Origin: Octopus sinensis
Lineage: Eukaryota
Assembly (NCBI RefSeq): GCF_006345805.1
Contig: NW_021833310.1
Coordinates: 1-27,901, forward strand
Direction of reading: 5' to 3'
Length of the DNA: 27,901 nt
Below the pieces are notes generated by a model. That model searched no databases and was not told where the DNA came from. It was given only the letters and a program-made list of their open reading frames with translations. The translations under genes and the position numbers were made by a program. This document shows, one piece after another, positions 8,365-23,682 of the stretch (within the stretch, counting starts at the first letter, position 1; each line of letters starts with the position of its first letter).

Positions 8365-8591
8365 GGTAAGACCTGGTACAATACTATCACATATTGTTAC
8401 GAGAAAAGGTTAAGAAGTGCCTACCATCGGTCGCCAAAAATTTGTCGGTCTCTTGGCTCAAGACTGATGAAAATACAAAAGAGATGTTACATGCAGAATA
8501 ATTTCTGTACTATGGGCTGGAATCACCGCGAGGATCTGTGGCATATATTCAGTGAACCATTAGAAACAGCCAAATCACCTCATTATAAAAG
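8365..8591 (+). CDS. STC: Stanniocalcin-like gene, paralog L, internal coding exon (equivalent to vertebrate STC1 exon 3)
   Basis: ctaac...ttcacAG| acceptor and AG|GTAAGT donor. 227 nt, and only one frame is open: GKTWYNTITYCYEKRLRSAYHRSPKICRSLGSRLMKIQKRCYMQNNFCTMGWNHREDLWHIFSEPLETAKSPHYK. Spacing GK-x8-C-x15-C-x10-Q-x2-CY-x3-N-x-C-x7-E-x8-P aligns without gaps to human STC1 from G88 as I recall that sequence. Confidence 0.8.
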
Positions 8592-8999
8592 GTAAGTATT
8601 TGTTATTTTGGTTGTTGTTGATGGTGGTGATAGTAATAGAAAAGGTGGTGTTTCATGCAACACTTTTGAAATGTCAGCGAAATATCGGTGCCAGCTAATC
8701 ACTTAAGGAATTCTGTCATCCATTGTATTGTGTTTGCTAAAATCATGCTTGTAGATTTACTATCTTTGCTAATCTTAACTATTTCATTTGCTATTTCCTT
8801 TAATCGTGATTCACTGTAACCGCGTTGACATAATGACGTACAAAAGCATTTGCATGTTTCCAGTAGTCCCCTATGTCAGTACAAATTCATTTTTCCTCAC
8901 AAATTAGGATTTCGGATTTGACCGAATAAGATGATGTGGATGATCGAAGCGGTGATGGAGATAAATGTGGATTGACATGGCTTTGCAAAATAAGCGTCA

Positions 9000-10460
9000 C
9001 TGTTCTGCCTCCAGAAAACTTAACTTCTGTGTCCAAAAATTCAACGCTAGTCTTTGAAAAACTAGACGTAAATTTTATGTTGGGCTTAACAGTCACAGAA
9101 ATGCAAGAAGTCTATTAAACTATCCTGTGATCCTTCCCAGACAAAAGATACGCCGTCAATGAACCGTAACCAGAATATTGGTTCATGACTAAGAAGGAAT
9201 TTGAATATCTTCAGTAACTGTGTCTCGAATTTCGTCATGAAGACATTAGCGAAATTAACTGCCATGGGGGTACCCATGGCGCAACCCTTCATCTGGTGGT
9301 AAAATCTTTGTCTAAACTTCATTGTGTTACTTTCTAACACAAACCTCAATAATCTACAAAGAAAATTTGATGGAATACTTTTGTTTGCCTGCTATTCGAA
9401 GGCATCCATGCATGCGTCTACCTTTTCATTGTAGTCAATATTAGGATATAAGGATGAAACATCCATGGTTACCAAAAAAAAAAATGTTCTCAATACGGTT
9501 TCGGTGCTTCAAAAAAAGTTGCTGATTTTAGATACAAAATCAAAGGTATCCCGAATATATGAACTTGATCGTTTTGCGACGGGGAGTAGAAAGCCATCCA
9601 GCCAATCGGAAATTTTGACCGTGCAACATTCATATCCGCTGTAAATTGGACGCATTGGAGGAAATCTTTCGAACTTTTTGTGTATTTTAGGGAGACCATA
9701 AAATACAGGTGTTCTTCCTTCTGACTATAAATTCTTAGATTCAGCCTTATTAACGAAATAGTTTTCCTCCATTTCCAGAATTATTTTGTCAAGTTTCTCT
9801 CTGTAATTGGGGTTTGGATCGACAGGTAATTCTTCATATGAAGTTTTGTCACTTAAAACTTCTTCACAAGCCGAAATATACTCACTTTTGTCCATAATTA
9901 CGATAGCGTTTCCCTTATCCGCCATGTTAATAACAATAGAATCGTTATTAGCTGGACGTCGGAGTGCATAACGTTGGAAATTTGAGAGGTTATTCCAGGA
10001 CTTCTTTCCACTTGTGTTAAGGCTTTCTCTAATGCTTGCCTGGCAAGATTCACGGAATTCTAGTAGTGCTTGTGAACGTCCATCCCAAACTTTATCTGGA
10101 TACCAATTGGGATTCTTTTCAATCCAATTATGCCAGATTCGATAATCATCATTTTTTACTTTTAGTAAACATATGATTTTCTGACTCCTTGTTACTAGCT
10201 TTTTCAAAAAAATATTCTTTCAGCTTGTGACGCCGGACAAACTGAATTAACCCGTGAGCTAGTTTATTCTTGTGGAAATTCTTAGTGCTTGGGCAAAAAC
10301 TCAGTCCAAGCTCTAAGACTGAGACATCATCTGGCGAAAGTTTTAGTTTAGATAAATTTATGACAGACTTATTCTCTAGTGTGATGGTTTTTTTCTCAGG
10401 CAAGTGGTTTTCGGAGTCTTTTTCTCATTAGATTGCTGACTACATTTTGGGCTTTGCTCG
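9000..10460 (-). mobile_element. Decayed Penelope-like element RT (no GIY-YIG seen), intronic and antisense to STC-L
   Basis: VINLSKLKLS...LELGLSFCP, ADKGNAIVIMDK.EY, LVTMDVSSLYPNI, GCAMGTPMAVNFAN, WLRFIDG and IKFT...SVEFLD motifs. Homology stops after FSGG. Confidence 0.85.
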
Positions 10461-10470
10461 AAATCTTCAC

Positions 10471-10703
10471 TTAAAACACGGAACCTATTGAGTGATAAAA
10501 TTTGTTGTGAATGTTCACATGAGAAGTTATAACTTTTAGTCGCCTTCTAAGGGTAATCCATTTCTGGATGGGTGATAGAAAGTGTCTTCTGTGGTTTTGT
10601 AGACATTTGAAAAACCTTACTTTCGGGAAAGGAACAAATTTATGTTTTCGAGGCAAAATCTTAAATGTGCTCGCATTTTTGACTGATCAAATAGAAACTT
10701 CCC
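10471..10703 (-). pseudogene. C-terminal remnant of a Ulp1/C48-like protease ORF
   Basis: Mirror of 22001-22236 (FDQSKMRAHLRFCLENN..PFPK). The upstream part is deleted in this arm. Confidence 0.55.
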
Positions 10704-10854
10704 TGTGTGTGTGTGTGTGGTGTGTGTATGTGTGTGTGTGTTGTGTCTGTCTATCTATCAGTCTGTCTGATGTCTGCCTATTTGAGTGTGTTTGTCTGAG
10801 TGTTATGATTGACTGAGTTTTTGATTAAGACACCAATCTATTTTTATATTGTAG

Positions 10855-20923: not shown

Positions 20924-21029
20924 CTAGAAACATTTAAGTGTCTTCAACTTGGCATTGATCCATCTTGCTAATTTTTCACCTTCTTGCGTTTTGCATCCTC
21001 TAGCCATCTTGGCAATATTTTTCCACATC
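20924..21029 (-). CDS. STC: Stanniocalcin-like gene, paralog R, terminal coding exon
   Basis: tgtAG| acceptor and frame (G)MWKNIAKMARGCKTQEGEKLARWINAKLKTLKCF*. 106 nt, the same length as the left copy. Confidence 0.75.
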
Positions 21030-21689
21030 CTACAATATAAAAAATAGATTGGTGTCTTAATCAAAAACACTCAGTCAATAACACTCAGACAAACACACTC
21101 AAATAGGCAGACATCAGACAGACTGATAAATAGACAGACACAAACACACACACACACACACACACACACACACACACACACACACACACACACACACACA
21201 CACACAACACACACACACACACACACACACACACACACACAGAGTAACAGAGTTTGCTTTTATTGTCTAATGCTAACTCAGTTTGAATCTGGAGGCAAAT
21301 TCAACTCTACAAGAGGTAGGAAAATACCAATTCCAGAAGCAAGAAAAGGCGAAAGCAACTGTAGGGAACCTGCTTTCTATATTGCAACAAATCTCAGACT
21401 AAGAGAATCAAGTGGATTGGAATGGTGGACTCGTTTTTTTATCATAAGAAAGAAGCCACATTTCAGCACTGATTTGATGAGACACTTGTCAGGGGATTGC
21501 ACGTGGCCTCGTGCCCTTTTGTTGTTGCCCAACTCCAGCAGAGCGTACAGATTAAGAAGCGAGACACTTGCGACCCTCAGATACTCGCTGAATACGAAAG
21601 GGATTCCCTACATTGACATGGTTTTAGCCACCAACAGAAGAGCGAGCAATATCTCTAAGCAGCTTCTACAATTTCTGTGTGGAGCACAT

Positions 21690-22236
21690 GCAGTGACGTG
21701 AATAATAATCACACGGAATTTCTAACATACAATCAACACCGCACACTGTTTATTCAACACGACAGGAACAATCATTTTGTTTTATCAACCAATTTTTTCG
21801 GAGATGTTTATATTTATGTCAGTTTGAATTTACCAGTTTCGCAGGAACTAATGGCACAAAATCAACGTTGTATTCACCACAAACAAACATCACTCCTACA
21901 ATTCAACAAGTTCATATAATTAATCCCCAAGTTGGCGAATATGATTGTGAGCCTTTTGCCCTGGCGTATGCATTTGAACTGGTCATTGGAAATGCTCCAG
22001 GAAAGTTTCTATTTGATCAGTCAAAAATGCGAGCACATTTAAGATTTTGCCTCGAAAACAATAAATTTGTTCCTTTCCCGAAAGTAAAGGTTTTTCAAAT
22101 GTCTACAAAAACCACAGAAGACACTTTCTATCACCCATCCAGAAATGGATTACCCTTAGAAAGGCGACTAAAAGTTATAACTTCTCATGTGAACATTCAC
22201 AACAAATTTTATCACTCAATAGGTTCCGTGTTTTAA
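21690..22236 (+). pseudogene. Degenerate Ulp1/C48-like cysteine protease ORF (TE-associated)
   Basis: FIQHDRNNHFVL (His), IYVSL (YDSL-like), QQ...YDCEPFALAYA (Cys motif, DCG-like) and FDQSKMRAHLRFCL...PFP. One frameshift. Confidence 0.55.
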
Positions 22237-23045
22237 GTGAAGATTTCGAGCAAAGCCCAAAATGTAGTCAGCAATCTAATGAGAAAAAGACTCCGAAAAC
22301 CACTTGCCTGAGAAAAAACCATCACACTAGAGAATAAGTCTGTCATAAATTTATCTAAACTAAAACTTTCGCCAGATGATGTCTCAGTCTTAGAGCTTGG
22401 ACTGAGTTTTTTTGCAAGCACTAAGAATTTCCGCAAGAATAAACTAGCTCAAGGGTTATTTCAGTTTGTCCGGCGTCACAAGCTGAAAGAATATTTTTTT
22501 GAAAAAACTAGTAACAAGGAGTCAGAAAATCATATGTTTACTAAAAATAAAAAATGATGATTATCGAATCTGGCATAATTGGATTGAAAAGAATCCCAAT
22601 TGGTATCCAGATAAAGTTCGGGATGGACGTTCACAAGCACTACTAGAATTCCGTGAATCTTGCCAGGCAAGCATTAGAGAAAGCTTAAGACAAGTGGAAG
22701 AAGTCCTGGAATAACCTCAAAATTTCCACGTTATGCACTCCGACGTCCAGCTAATAACGATTCTATTGTTATTAACATGGCGGATAAGGGAAGCGCTATC
22801 GTCTTCATGACGAAATTCGGGACACAGTTACTGAAGATATTCAAATTCCTTCTTAGTCATGTACCAATATTCTGGTTACGGTTCAGTGACGACGTATTTT
22901 TTTTCTGGGAAGGATCACAGGATAGTTTAATAGACTTCTTGCATTTCTGTGACTGTTAAGCCCAACATAAAATTTACGTCTAGTTTTTCAAAGACTAGCG
23001 TTGAATTTTTGGACACAGAAGTTAAGTTTTCTGGAGGTAGAATAG
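22237..23045 (+). mobile_element. Right-arm copy of the Penelope-like RT, with a 657-bp internal deletion
   Basis: Mirror of 9000-10460. The junction at 22801-22802 fuses MADKGSAIV to FMTKFGTQ. Confidence 0.85.
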
Positions 23046-23455
23046 TGACGCTTATTTTGCAAAGCCATGTCAATCCACATTTATCTCCATCATCGCTTCG
23101 ATCATCCACATCATCTTATTCGGTCAAATCCGAAATCCTAATTTGTGAGGAAAAAATGAATTTGTACTGACATAGGGGACTACTGGAAACATGTAAATGC
23201 TTTTGTATGTCATTATGTCAAACGCGGTTACAGTGAATCACGATTAAAGGAAATAGCAAATGAAATAGCTAAGATTAGCAAAGATAGTAAATCTACAAGC
23301 ATGATTTTAGCAAACACAATACAATGGATGACAGAATTCCTTTAGTGATTAGCTGGCACCGACATTTCGCTGACATTTCAAAAGTGTTGCATGAAACACC
23401 ACCTTTTCTATTACTATCACCACCATCAACAACAACCAAAATAACAAATACTTAC

Positions 23456-23682
23456 CCTCTATAATGAGGTGATTTGGCTGTTTCTAATGGTTCACTAAAT
23501 ATATACCACAGATCCTCGCGGTGTGTCCAGCCCAAAGTACAGAAATTATTCTGTAAGTAACATTTCTTTTGTGTTTTCATCAGTATTATGCCAATAAACG
23601 GACAAACGATAGACGAACGTTTGTAGAGATTTATTAACTTTTTCACGAAACATCTTGTGATACTATAGTACCAGTTCTTACC
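23456..23682 (-). CDS. STC: Stanniocalcin-like gene, paralog R, internal coding exon
   Basis: ttcacAG| ... GG|GTAAGT, 227 nt: GKNWYYSITRCFVKKLINLYKRSSIVCPFIGIILMKTQKKCYLQNNFCTLGWTHREDLWYIFSEPLETAKSPHYR. All Cys and Trp are shared with the left copy and there are no indels. Confidence 0.8.

What the first reader, a model, noticed from the sequence alone, without database searches (positions are those of the whole stretch)
8365..23682. Tail-to-tail stanniocalcin-like paralogs whose exons have diverged far more than their introns
Seen (hand count): across 333 coding nt the copies differ at 48 nt and 35 of 110 aa, with only 2 purely synonymous codon changes, no indels and all 6 Cys retained. The first 33 codons alone carry 27 nt and 19 aa differences. 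The ~65 nt upstream and ~180 nt downstream of the internal exon differ at only about 1 and 2 sites. Known: exon-faster-than-intron change on a fixed Cys scaffold is the pattern described for toxin, immune and gamete-recognition families, whereas vertebrate stanniocalcins are conserved hormones and pappalysin inhibitors. Inference: strong diversifying selection on a duplicated cephalopod stanniocalcin, possibly a new secreted role.
Basis: partly seen in the sequence, partly recalled or inferred. Interest (0 to 1): 0.82.

Follow-up and report, generated by a model that had tools for sequence, protein, structure and literature searches.

The report
Fast-evolving stanniocalcin-like gene pair in octopus
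Two back-to-back copies of an octopus stanniocalcin-like gene sit in a large inverted duplication; their introns are about 98% identical but their coding exons differ about 6.5 times more, mostly by amino-acid changes, the pattern typical of toxin, immune and other arms-race genes.

Summary
Over 333 coding nt the copies differ at 48 nt and 35 of 110 aa, with 2 purely synonymous codons and 6 Cys kept. Flanks differ at 1/65 and 2/180 nt.

The window is an octopus locus about 98% identical to Octopus vulgaris chromosome OX597829.1. It holds the last two coding exons of two convergent genes, A (+) and B (-), in the arms of an inverted duplication.

Homology, Cys pattern and predicted fold place the proteins in the stanniocalcin family, as divergent members of an octopus-expanded cluster.

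- **Exon versus non-coding:** A-B divergence is 14.4% in exons and 2.2% in non-coding DNA (p=1e-20).
- **Selection:** omega is about 3.2 on the four-sequence tree (p=0.005), with 63 nonsynonymous and 6 synonymous changes.
- **Asymmetry:** against the O. vulgaris orthologue, copy A changed at 9.9% of coding sites and copy B at 1.2%. Non-coding divergence is 1.7-1.9%.
- **Conversion:** silent sites are also 4-5 times more diverged than introns, and 12 non-coding sites show concerted evolution. Arm-to-arm gene conversion therefore explains part of the contrast.

The variable segment aligns with the part of human STC2 that touches PAPP-A. Expression and secretion are untested. A 2026 preprint reports stanniocalcin-like salivary-gland toxins in octopus.

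The parts
4226..12232 (+). Arm A of the inverted duplication. It carries the 3' part of gene A.
   Evidence: blastn of the two arms gives 92-98% identity in collinear blocks. In O. vulgaris the arms are at least 22 kb long.
19691..27901 (-). Arm B of the inverted duplication. It carries the 3' part of gene B and is cut by the end of the window.
8365..8591 (+). Gene A internal coding exon: 227 nt, 75 2/3 codons, 4 Cys.
   Evidence: Canonical cag|G acceptor and G|gtaagt donor. tblastn to P0001. Orthologue at L002 19522-19748.
10855..10960 (+). Gene A last coding exon: 106 nt including the TAG stop, 2 Cys.
   Evidence: Orthologue at L002 21987-22092.
23456..23682 (-). Gene B internal coding exon.
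   Evidence: 95% aa identity to O. vulgaris P0001.
20924..21029 (-). Gene B last coding exon, including the stop.
   Evidence: The P0001 gene model joins these two exons exactly at 23456>21029.
8371..8463 (+). Hypervariable tract of A (codons 3-33 of the internal exon), covering a helix, a loop and the start of the next helix. It holds all 27 of the nt differences in the first 33 codons (99 nt).
   Evidence: Secondary structure, mapped. Aligns without gaps between two Cys anchors to STC2 residues ~101-131, which include K104 and C120 (PMC9579167).
23584..23676 (-). Hypervariable tract of B, the counterpart of 8371-8463.
   Evidence: Identical between the window and O. vulgaris (0 differences in codons 1-33).
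11037..11042 (+). AATAAA signal 77 nt after the stop of A.
20842..20847 (-). AATAAA signal 77 nt after the stop of B.
8592..10250 (+). Intron of A downstream of the internal exon. Informative sites here are concerted (window A equals window B, and differs from O. vulgaris A and B): 8642, 8697, 8787, 8954, 9027, 9034. No orthologous-pattern site lies between 8354 and 10254.
   Evidence: This marks arm-to-arm gene conversion after the two genomes split.
12288..19690 (.). Spacer between the arms. It consists of a 2.46-kb Tc1/mariner insertion (12288-14744, absent in O. vulgaris) followed by 14745-19676, which is orthologous to the 4.9-kb O. vulgaris spacer.

Best explanation
**What is in the window.** It contains the last two coding exons of two convergent (tail-to-tail) paralogous genes. 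They encode divergent stanniocalcin-family proteins with a helical, disulfide-rich fold: 10 core Cys plus a C-terminal 11th in the full-length orthologue. The genes lie in the two arms of an inverted duplication. It is at least 22 kb per arm in O. vulgaris, with a spacer of 4.9 kb there and 7.4 kb in the window.

**Two processes create the exon/intron contrast.**
1. Positive (diversifying) selection for amino-acid replacements. The replacements fall on family-variable positions and spare the scaffold. They are concentrated in a helix-loop segment homologous to the part of human STC2 that contacts its target protease PAPP-A, and in the C-terminal helices.
2. Intermittent arm-to-arm gene conversion. 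This keeps erasing non-coding divergence, so the duplication looks younger in the introns than at silent exon sites.

**Asymmetry after the split.** After the split between the window's genome and O. vulgaris, copy B stopped changing. Copy A kept accumulating replacements at about 6 times the neutral rate, independently in both lineages.

**Shown here:**
- the anatomy of the locus and the divergence counts;
- omega above 1;
- the A/B asymmetry;
- concerted non-coding sites;
- family and fold assignment.

**Inferred, not shown:**
- Both genes make secreted proteins. A candidate signal-peptide exon exists upstream of B in O. vulgaris.
- The variable surface binds an external or fast-changing partner. 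Salivary-gland (venom) use is the leading guess, because stanniocalcin-like proteins are reported as highly expressed octopus posterior-salivary-gland products.
For: **Counts and divergence**
- A-B divergence is 2.23% non-coding and 14.4% coding (p=1e-20). In O. vulgaris it is 1.9% and 15.0%.
- The upstream coding exon, available only in O. vulgaris, shows the same exon-bounded divergence: 34/159 nt, omega 2.6, flanks 0-2 differences per 50 nt.

**Selection**
- Nei-Gojobori dN 0.181 and dS 0.084.
- GY94 maximum likelihood gives omega 3.2, LRT against omega=1 p=0.005-0.006. The A terminal branches have omega 3.6, p=0.04.
- Parsimony gives 63 N and 6 S changes, against 24% synonymous expected from the locus's own non-coding spectrum (p=9e-4).
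- Collapsing clustered changes into single events leaves 43 N and 3 S (p=0.002).

**Asymmetry**
- Changes per branch over 333 nt: window A 14, O. vulgaris A 16, window B 2, O. vulgaris B 2, internal branch 29, plus 3 sites with more than one change.
- Window A versus O. vulgaris A: coding 9.9%, non-coding 1.9% (p=2e-12). Window B versus O. vulgaris B: 1.2% and 1.7%.

**Gene conversion**
- 12 concerted and 22 orthologous non-coding sites. The concerted sites cluster at 8642-9034.
- Silent exon divergence is about 9% against 1.9% non-coding (P=1e-4 to 0.01).

**Fold is kept**
- All four reading frames and splice sites are intact.
- Variable positions fall in family-variable columns (Mann-Whitney p=0.001).

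**Family**
-.
- Multi-copy cluster in O. bimaculoides, with the same variable segment.
- Salivary-gland stanniocalcin-like toxins: preprint 10.64898/2026.02.02.703354.
Against: - No expression data could be examined.
- The only annotated model of the A orthologue (P0019) skips the internal exon and reads the last exon out of frame.
- Neither annotated O. vulgaris model has a signal peptide.
- The O. vulgaris A copy has lost the C-terminal Cys.
- The pairwise dN > dS test is only marginal (Fisher p=0.07). With 110 codons and 4 sequences no site model is possible.
- Several changes are clustered multi-nucleotide events (for example CAAGAA to CCATCT), which can inflate omega.
- The rest of the genome could not be searched for an unannotated close paralog.
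- It is not established that the window and O. vulgaris are different species rather than diverged haplotypes.
- It is not shown that this pair belongs to the salivary-gland set in the preprint.
Confidence: 0.7

Rival explanations
1. An old duplication whose non-coding arms are homogenised by gene conversion. Under this view the exons only look fast because they escape conversion, and no positive selection is needed.
For: - Silent exon sites are 4-5 times more diverged than introns.
- There are 12 concerted and 4 cross-pattern non-coding sites.
- On the internal branch, synonymous changes number 3, against about 0.5 that I estimate from the non-coding rate (22 orthologous sites in 3725 columns).
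Against: - Omega is 3.2 (p=0.005), and N:S is 63:6 against a neutral 3:1.
- Conversion between arms cannot lower orthologue-to-orthologue non-coding divergence below the species split. Even so, the A exons differ by 9.9% between genomes against 1.9% non-coding.
- Divergence drops to 0-1 per 50 nt right at the splice sites, with no shoulders.
Confidence: 0.1
2. The divergent exon tracts were imported by gene conversion or segment switching from a third paralog. [quoted passage not shown]
For: - The 100-nt tract is sharply bounded at 26% divergence with no indels.
- Clustered multi-nucleotide changes occur on single branches.
- The family is multi-copy in octopus.
Against: - dS in the tract (0.13-0.19) is far below dN (0.41), unlike sequence taken from an old functional paralog.
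- The A-type tract is shared by both genomes, so it predates their split.
- The same pattern is confined within all three coding exons.
- The next closest known proteins are no more than 45% identical to P0001 overall and no more than 53% in exon-level matches.
- No 10-14-mer donor was found in 58 kb of the locus.
- Post-split changes in the two A lineages interleave at different sites.
Confidence: 0.07
3. Copy A is hyper-polymorphic. The window and the O. vulgaris assembly would then carry long-lived, divergent A alleles maintained by balancing selection, rather than fixed differences between species.
For: - Non-coding divergence between the two sources is only 1.7-1.9%, and the species of the window is unknown.
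- The A exons differ by 9.9% between the two sources.
Against: - Old alleles should raise linked silent and flanking divergence, and they do not. Window A versus O. vulgaris A has dS 0.057 (3.5 sites), and in the last exon 17 N against 1 S.
- Most A-lineage changes are derived singletons relative to B, in each lineage.
Confidence: 0.08
4. A mutational process restricted to the exons, such as error-prone repair or templated multi-nucleotide mutation as once proposed for conopeptide genes, raises both dN and dS.
For: - dS is also above the intron rate.
- Multi-nucleotide clusters occur.
- Transversions are in excess in the A exons, 21 tv to 9 ts, against 46:51 in non-coding DNA.
Against: - Copy B has the same structure and near-identical context, yet shows no acceleration after the split: 2 changes per lineage.
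- The N:S ratio departs from mutational expectation.
- Scaffold positions are spared.
Confidence: 0.04
5. One or both copies are decaying pseudogenes, or they are annotation noise.
For: - The P0019 model skips the internal exon.
- The O. vulgaris A copy lost its last Cys.
- The annotated models have no signal peptide.
- No protein from this A/B clade other than P0001 is in the databases.
Against: - Decay cannot exceed the neutral rate, yet the exons evolve 5-8 times faster than the introns.
- All four 110-codon frames are open, splice sites are canonical and AATAAA signals are conserved.
- The 10 core Cys and the hydrophobic scaffold are retained.
Confidence: 0.02

Closest known systems
Vertebrate stanniocalcins STC1 and STC2 (Pfam PF03298), secreted glycoprotein hormones and pappalysin (PAPP-A) inhibitors
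   Same: - Size is about 150-250 aa.
- The conserved ten-Cys pattern is present, plus an extra C-terminal Cys. In vertebrates the 11th Cys makes the dimer (PMC5654410).
- The predicted all-helical fold has STC2 chains as its four best PDB matches (TM 0.48-0.58).
- An N-x-T sequon is present in the exon upstream of the window (NNLTES).
   Different: - Only about 14% identity to STC2, and below Pfam's cut-off on its own.
- The residue aligned to STC2 C120, which forms the covalent link to PAPP-A, is Arg in both copies. This matches other invertebrate homologues (PMC11925022).
- Vertebrate stanniocalcins are conserved single-copy hormones. This is a lineage-specific, multi-copy family with omega above 1.
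Cephalopod posterior-salivary-gland 'stanniocalcin doppelganger toxins', superfamily SF5 (bioRxiv 10.64898/2026.02.02.703354)
   Same: These are octopus stanniocalcin-like proteins with a signal peptide and the full Cys pattern. They are reported as highly expressed salivary (venom) gland products in O. bimaculoides and H. maculosa. Their AlphaFold models overlay on STC2.
   Different: - No sequences or accessions from the preprint were available, so membership of this A/B pair in SF5 is untested.
- The preprint does not report the palindromic pair, exon-versus-intron rates or omega.
- The closest O. bimaculoides genes found here are only 44-53% identical to A and B.
Accelerated exon evolution in snake venom gene families: PLA2, three-finger toxins and ASSET (PMC2474615, PMC2711939, PMC6062510)
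   Same: - Duplicated secreted Cys-scaffold genes.
- Exons change faster than introns.
- dN/dS is above 1.
- Short exon segments are changed radically while the Cys are fixed.
   Different: - Different phylum and fold.
- Here the copies are a convergent pair inside a palindrome, and gene conversion of non-coding DNA contributes to the contrast.
- Venom-gland expression is not shown.
Conotoxin gene superfamilies (PMC3862624)
   Same: A molluscan secreted Cys-rich family in which the mature-peptide exon is hypervariable while the neighbouring introns and other regions are conserved.
   Different: - The protein is much larger (about 160 aa, helical).
- The hypervariability is a sub-segment inside two or three exons, not one mature-toxin exon.
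Gene-bearing palindromes with arm-to-arm gene conversion, such as the ampliconic palindromes of primate sex chromosomes (from my own knowledge)
   Same: - Large inverted arms are separated by a short spacer, with one gene copy per arm.
- There are signs of arm-to-arm conversion (12 concerted sites).
   Different: - The arms are only about 97.8% identical rather than above 99.9%.
- The coding exons are being driven apart rather than kept identical.

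Membership tests
Stanniocalcin family (Pfam PF03298) | Match to the family HMM above the curated cut-off (23 bits) | tested here: inconclusive
   Window A scores 19.3 bits (E=8e-4). Window B has no hit. The full-length orthologue P0001 scores 16.5 bits. Relatives linked to P0001 at E=1.8e-40 to 3e-13 (P0002, P0004, P0005, P0006, P0009, P0012, P0014, P0016) score 28-50 bits. 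Membership is therefore transitive.
Stanniocalcin family (Pfam PF03298) | Conserved pattern of ten cysteines (PMC5654410) | tested here: met
   The window shows the last 6 Cys in both copies. Full-length P0001 has 11 Cys. Nine align with STC2 Cys in one gap-poor alignment. C75, C91, C105 and C112 are invariant and C152 nearly invariant in 25 family members.
Stanniocalcin family (Pfam PF03298) | STC2-type helical bundle fold | tested here: met
   The AlphaFold2 model of P0001 has pLDDT 90.9 and pTM 0.83. The Foldseek PDB top four are all STC2 chains (8a7e, 8hgh, 8a7d, 7y5q), with probability 0.98-1.0 and TM 0.48-0.58 over 162-169 columns. The next hits have probability 0.33 or less. The E-values are weak (0.04-0.16).
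Stanniocalcin family (Pfam PF03298) | Signal peptide, meaning a secreted protein | tested here: inconclusive
   This lies outside the window. The annotated O. vulgaris models lack a signal peptide. A candidate exon at L001 1627-1735 encodes a hydrophobic N-terminus resembling the O. sinensis paralog P0004, with a phase-1 donor that fits the next exon. Splicing is not shown.
Stanniocalcin family (Pfam PF03298) | STC2-type covalent pappalysin inhibition through Cys120 | tested here: not met
   The position aligned to STC2 C120 is Arg (local residue 22) in A and B of both genomes. Non-covalent, STC1-like binding is not testable here.
Accelerated-evolution secreted or toxin multigene families | Exon substitution rate exceeds the intron rate | tested here: met
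   14.4% against 2.23% (p=1e-20). Orthologous A copies differ by 9.9% against 1.9% (p=2e-12). The upstream exon shows the same pattern. The same trend is seen in O. bimaculoides tandem copies.
Accelerated-evolution secreted or toxin multigene families | dN/dS above 1 on a fixed Cys scaffold | tested here: met
   Omega is 3.2 with LRT p=0.005. N:S is 63:6 (p=9e-4). All 6 Cys encoded in the window are kept in both window copies, and substitutions avoid family-conserved columns.
Accelerated-evolution secreted or toxin multigene families | Expression in a venom, secretory, immune or reproductive tissue | not testable with these tools
   No RNA-seq or proteome access was available. The only indirect evidence is the O. 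vulgaris gene models and the family-level preprint.
Cephalopod salivary-gland stanniocalcin-like toxins (SF5) | Sequence belongs to the SF5 cluster of highly expressed salivary-gland precursors | not testable with these tools
   The preprint's sequences and supplements are not held.
Palindrome with arm-to-arm gene conversion | Inverted arms with a spacer, and concerted evolution of the arms within a lineage | tested here: met
   The arms are 4226-12232 and 19691-27901. There are 12 concerted sites against 22 orthologous non-coding sites, clustered at 8642-9034 and 11209-11217. Conversion is patchy and arm identity is only about 97.8%.

The most novel reading that the evidence does not exclude
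An octopus lineage has turned the stanniocalcin scaffold, a conserved protease-inhibiting hormone in vertebrates, into an arms-race protein. Under this reading the target-contact surface is the segment homologous to STC2 K104-C120. It is being re-tuned repeatedly in one arm of a palindrome while the other arm keeps a stable version. The palindrome would then act as a 'conserve one copy, experiment with the other' device. Conversion would reset the non-coding DNA, and occasionally the exons. The last exon of A and B differed at only 1-2 sites at the split, and then gained 8-9 replacements independently in each A lineage.
Probability: 0.2. Interest if true: 0.8.

Novelty: new member of a known kind. 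Interest (0 to 1): 0.58.

Why it matters
Stanniocalcins are known as slowly evolving hormones and pappalysin inhibitors. No function is established for the invertebrate homologues.

This pair differs by 14% in its exons and 2% in its introns. Omega is about 3, and one copy is still racing in two sister genomes. That is a clean natural experiment in three ways:

- It points to the helix-loop segment and the C-terminal helices as the functional surface of an invertebrate stanniocalcin.
- It gives a concrete candidate for the stanniocalcin-like salivary-gland toxins just reported in cephalopods.
- It shows selection and arm-to-arm gene conversion acting in opposite directions within one palindrome.

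It also flags two gene models in the O. vulgaris annotation that look incomplete: neither has a signal peptide, and the A model skips the internal exon. No protein matching these genes from any other annotation was found.

Tried and rejected
- **Close relatives by word-indexed protein search.** A search with copy A found only P0001. I therefore used the exhaustive representative search. The two remaining word-indexed searches were not spent, because no further close relative could be expected.
- **Upstream exons in the window.** tblastn found none. Window 1-2880 is not collinear with O. vulgaris.
- **Signal-peptide exon.** tblastn with N-termini of paralogs gave one plausible hit upstream of B in O. 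vulgaris. The matching region for A lies beyond the fetched locus.
- **Structured RNAs.** Rfam and tRNA scans of the window found nothing.
- **Local templates for the clustered changes.** None was found in the window, L001 or L002.
- **Pairwise Fisher test of dN > dS.** This was only marginal (p=0.07). I therefore added the tree-wide test, the maximum-likelihood LRT and the cluster-collapsed test.
- **RNA-editing or transition-biased explanation.** Rejected, because the A-lineage changes are mostly transversions.
- **Assembly artefact.** Rejected, because an independent assembly has the same architecture.
- **Pseudogene decay.** Rejected as the cause of the contrast, because decay cannot exceed the neutral rate.
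- **Preprint sequences.** No supplements or sequences are held.

Full report
**1. What is there**

The window contains a large inverted duplication. Arm A runs from about 4226 to 12232 (+) and arm B from 27901 to 19691 (-). The arms are 92-98% identical in collinear blocks.

Each arm carries two short coding exons with canonical splice sites:
- Copy A: 8365-8591 and 10855-10960.
- Copy B: 23682-23456 and 21029-20924.

The two genes converge. Their stop codons are 9.96 kb apart, and each has an AATAAA signal 77 nt after its stop.

**2.

Every hand count was reproduced exactly.
- 48/333 nt and 35/110 aa differ.
- Two codons are purely synonymous, there are no indels, and 6 Cys are kept.
- The first 33 codons carry 27 nt and 19 aa differences.
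- The flanks carry 1 difference in the 65 nt upstream and 2 in the 180 nt downstream of the internal exon.

**3. Origin and orthologues**

A protein search with copy A returned a single relative, a 174-aa O. vulgaris hypothetical protein, P0001. Its locus (L001) and the neighbouring gene's locus (L002) lie on OX597829.1 at 42.31-42.37 Mb. They are collinear with the window at 97-99% identity.

The window therefore comes from O. vulgaris or a very close relative. Trusted non-coding divergence is 1.7-1.9%.

The O. vulgaris locus has the same palindrome, with arms of at least 22 kb that include all coding exons. It also has the same two genes:
- P0001 is the orthologue of B, with 4 aa differences in 110.
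- The orthologue of A (L002 19522-19748 and 21987-22092) is intact.
- The annotated A model, P0019, skips the internal exon and reads the last exon out of frame.

The Cys-rich exon upstream of the window's exons lies outside the window on both sides.

**4. Family**

Direct Pfam matches to Stanniocalcin are below the 23-bit cut-off: 19.3 bits for A, none for B, 16.5 bits for P0001.

An exhaustive HMMER search with P0001 found 72 representative relatives.
- The sources named for ten of them were Octopus (three species), Argonauta, a chiton and amphioxus.
- All ten of those scanned against Pfam pass the cut-off, at 28-62 bits.

Further support comes from sequence and structure.
- P0001's best PDB sequence match is human STC2, with nine Cys aligned.
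- An AlphaFold2 model built on a 25-sequence alignment has pLDDT 90.9.
- Its four best Foldseek matches in the PDB are the four STC2 chains (probability 0.98-1.0, TM 0.48-0.58). The E-values are weak.

'Stanniocalcin-like' is therefore right, with A and B as a very divergent subclade.

O. bimaculoides has at least five related genes in 140 kb of CM046625.1. Three are in tandem and two form a tail-to-tail pair. In a neighbour-joining tree A and B group together, apart from all of these. The A/B duplication therefore occurred after the split from that lineage, but before the split between the window's genome and O. vulgaris.

**5. Exon versus non-coding divergence**

I aligned four arms: window A, window B, O. 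vulgaris A and O. vulgaris B. I kept 3725 non-coding columns that were free of gaps and satellites.

| Comparison | Non-coding | Coding | Fisher p |
|---|---|---|---|
| Window A vs window B | 2.23% | 14.4% | 1e-20 |
| O. vulgaris A vs O. vulgaris B | 1.91% | 15.0% | 3e-24 |
| Window A vs O. vulgaris A | 1.91% | 9.9% | 2e-12 |
| Window B vs O. vulgaris B | 1.66% | 1.2% | not significant |

The divergence peak is sharp. There are 26 differences in 8385-8484, against 0-2 per 50 nt in the adjoining intron.

The upstream exon, compared between the two O. vulgaris copies, shows the same behaviour. It has 34 differences in 159 nt, and divergence stops at the splice sites.

**6. Selection**

- Nei-Gojobori for window A versus window B gives dN 0.181, dS 0.084 and omega 2.2. 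In the first 33 codons dN is 0.41 and dS 0.13.
- Parsimony on the four-taxon tree gives 63 nonsynonymous and 6 synonymous changes. With the substitution spectrum measured on the same locus's non-coding DNA, 24% of non-stop mutations would be synonymous (binomial p=9e-4).
- Collapsing neighbouring changes into single events still gives 43 N and 3 S (p=0.002).
- A GY94 codon model that I coded gives omega 3.2, with LRT against omega=1 p=0.005-0.006. For the two A terminal branches omega is 3.6 (p=0.04). For the internal branch it is 2.5 (p=0.10).
- Positions that vary fall preferentially in columns that vary across the family (p=0.001). All scaffold residues are kept.

**7. Asymmetry**

| Branch | Changes in 333 nt |
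|---|---|
| Window A | 14 |
| O. vulgaris A | 16 |
| Window B | 2 |
| O. vulgaris B | 2 |
| Internal (A versus B) | 29 |
| Sites with more than one change | 3 |

About 2 changes per terminal branch are expected from the non-coding rate.

In the last exon, A and B differed at only 1-2 sites when the genomes split. The two A lineages then gained 8-9 replacements each, at interleaved and different sites. This rules out A-B conversion as their source.

**8. Gene conversion also contributes**

Non-coding informative sites split into 22 with the orthologous pattern, 12 concerted and 4 cross-pattern. The concerted sites cluster at 8642-9034, just downstream of the internal exon, and at 11209-11217.

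Silent sites in the exons are about 9% diverged between O. vulgaris A and B. That is 8.7 of 94 synonymous sites, or 6 purely synonymous codons, against 1.9% in non-coding DNA (P=1e-4 to 0.01).

The introns are therefore 'too similar'. The duplication is probably several times older than the non-coding identity suggests, and conversion has reset non-coding DNA. The 6.5-fold contrast is the product of this effect and of omega above 1.

**9. Where the changes fall**

The hypervariable tract (codons 3-33 of the internal exon) covers a long helix, a short loop and the start of the next helix in the model.

Between two Cys anchors it aligns without gaps to STC2 residues ~101-131.
- STC2 K104 is a named contact with the PAPP-A LNR3 module (PMC9579167). 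It aligns to local position 6, which is N, K or Y in the four sequences.
- STC2 C120, the covalent link to PAPP-A, aligns to an invariant Arg. This matches the reported absence of C120 in invertebrate homologues (PMC11925022).

The same segment is the most variable one among the O. bimaculoides tandem copies.

**10. Function**

Function is inferred, not shown.
- A candidate signal-peptide exon with the right splice phase lies 14 kb upstream of B's Cys-rich exon in O. vulgaris.
- A February 2026 preprint lists stanniocalcin-like 'doppelganger toxins' (superfamily SF5) among highly expressed posterior-salivary-gland products of O. bimaculoides and H. maculosa.
- Whether A and B belong to that set could not be tested.

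The evolutionary mode is the one described for snake-venom and cone-snail toxin genes (PMC2474615, PMC2711939, PMC6062510, PMC3862624).

**11. Verdict**

This is a new member of a known kind, accelerated exon evolution in a duplicated secreted Cys-scaffold gene. It sits on an unexpected scaffold and in an unusual palindromic setting.

The main gaps are:
- expression data;
- a whole-genome search for close paralogs;
- population data;
- more species.

Noticed in passing
window 12288-14744: A 2.46-kb insertion that is absent from the orthologous O. vulgaris spacer. It carries Tc1/mariner transposase fragments: ORF 12996-13517 (-) matches HTH_Tnp_Tc3_2 at E=2e-18, and a further ORF lies at 12498-12719 (-). 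A related 350-nt piece lies inverted at 17672-18020 and is present in O. vulgaris.
   Followed up: partly
window 1-2880: This stretch is not collinear with the O. vulgaris locus and is GC-richer (45-52% against about 35%). It has overlapping ORFs at 321-1041 with no Pfam hit. It looks like a lineage-specific repeat insertion in the long intron of gene A, which is why A's upstream exon is not in the window.
   Followed up: partly
window 9252-9899 and 21183-21997: Structural differences between the arms inside the intron between the two exons. A has 648 nt with no counterpart in B or in either O. vulgaris arm. A also lacks 815 nt (junction at 10703/10704, 150 nt upstream of its last exon) that B and both O. 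vulgaris arms have.
   Followed up: partly
window 3799-4548 (-), 26962-27426 (+), 6387-7259 (-), 25244-25654 (+): Reverse-transcriptase and zf-RVT fragments of non-LTR retroelements lie inside the long intron in both arms. The elements were therefore there before the duplication.
   Followed up: partly
L002 10001-25649 (P0019) and L001 10001-27985 (P0001): The O. vulgaris gene models look incomplete. P0019 skips the 227-nt internal exon, reads the last exon out of frame and adds a far-downstream exon. Neither model has a signal peptide, although a candidate signal-peptide exon lies at L001 1627-1735.
   Followed up: partly
L002 22084-22086 (codon 109 of the A orthologue): The O. vulgaris A copy has replaced the C-terminal (11th) Cys by Ser (TGT to AGT). 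In vertebrate stanniocalcins the 11th Cys makes the homodimer, so this copy may be monomeric.
   Followed up: no
window 10895-10904: Four substitutions fall within five bases on the window-A branch alone (CAAGAA to CCATCT, changing Gln-Glu to Pro-Ser). O. vulgaris A has an adjacent double change (GGA to TTA) at codon 87. No local template was found.
   Followed up: yes
window 18366-19106 (-): A 246-aa ORF rich in Glu and Lys sits in the spacer between the arms. The spacer is 98.8% conserved with O. vulgaris. The ORF has no Pfam match and no gene is called there in O. vulgaris.
   Followed up: partly
window 19086-19234 / 19370-19518: A 149-nt inverted repeat (96% complementary, 135 nt apart) lies near the inner end of arm B. 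It may be a small foldback element.
   Followed up: no
window 21134-21241; 11376-11481 and 20440-20525; 5209-5353, 7088-7233 and 24847-25016: There are long microsatellites. Arm B has an (AC)n array 105-212 nt upstream of its last exon; the matching stretch of arm A (about 10705-10800) is GT-rich by eye, but no tandem array was called there. Trinucleotide arrays occur at matching positions in both arms. They make the arm alignment unreliable around 7100-7800.
   Followed up: no
L003 10548-55824 and L004 9923-33731 (O. bimaculoides CM046625.1, 11.23-11.375 Mb): A cluster of at least five stanniocalcin-like genes: three tandem copies and a second tail-to-tail pair. One RefSeq model (333 aa, P0073) spans 46 kb and seems to fuse exons of more than one copy.
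   Followed up: partly
P0008 (660 aa, source not looked up): A relative from the representative search combines a phospholipase A2 domain (E=1e-20) with two stanniocalcin stretches in one protein.
   Followed up: no
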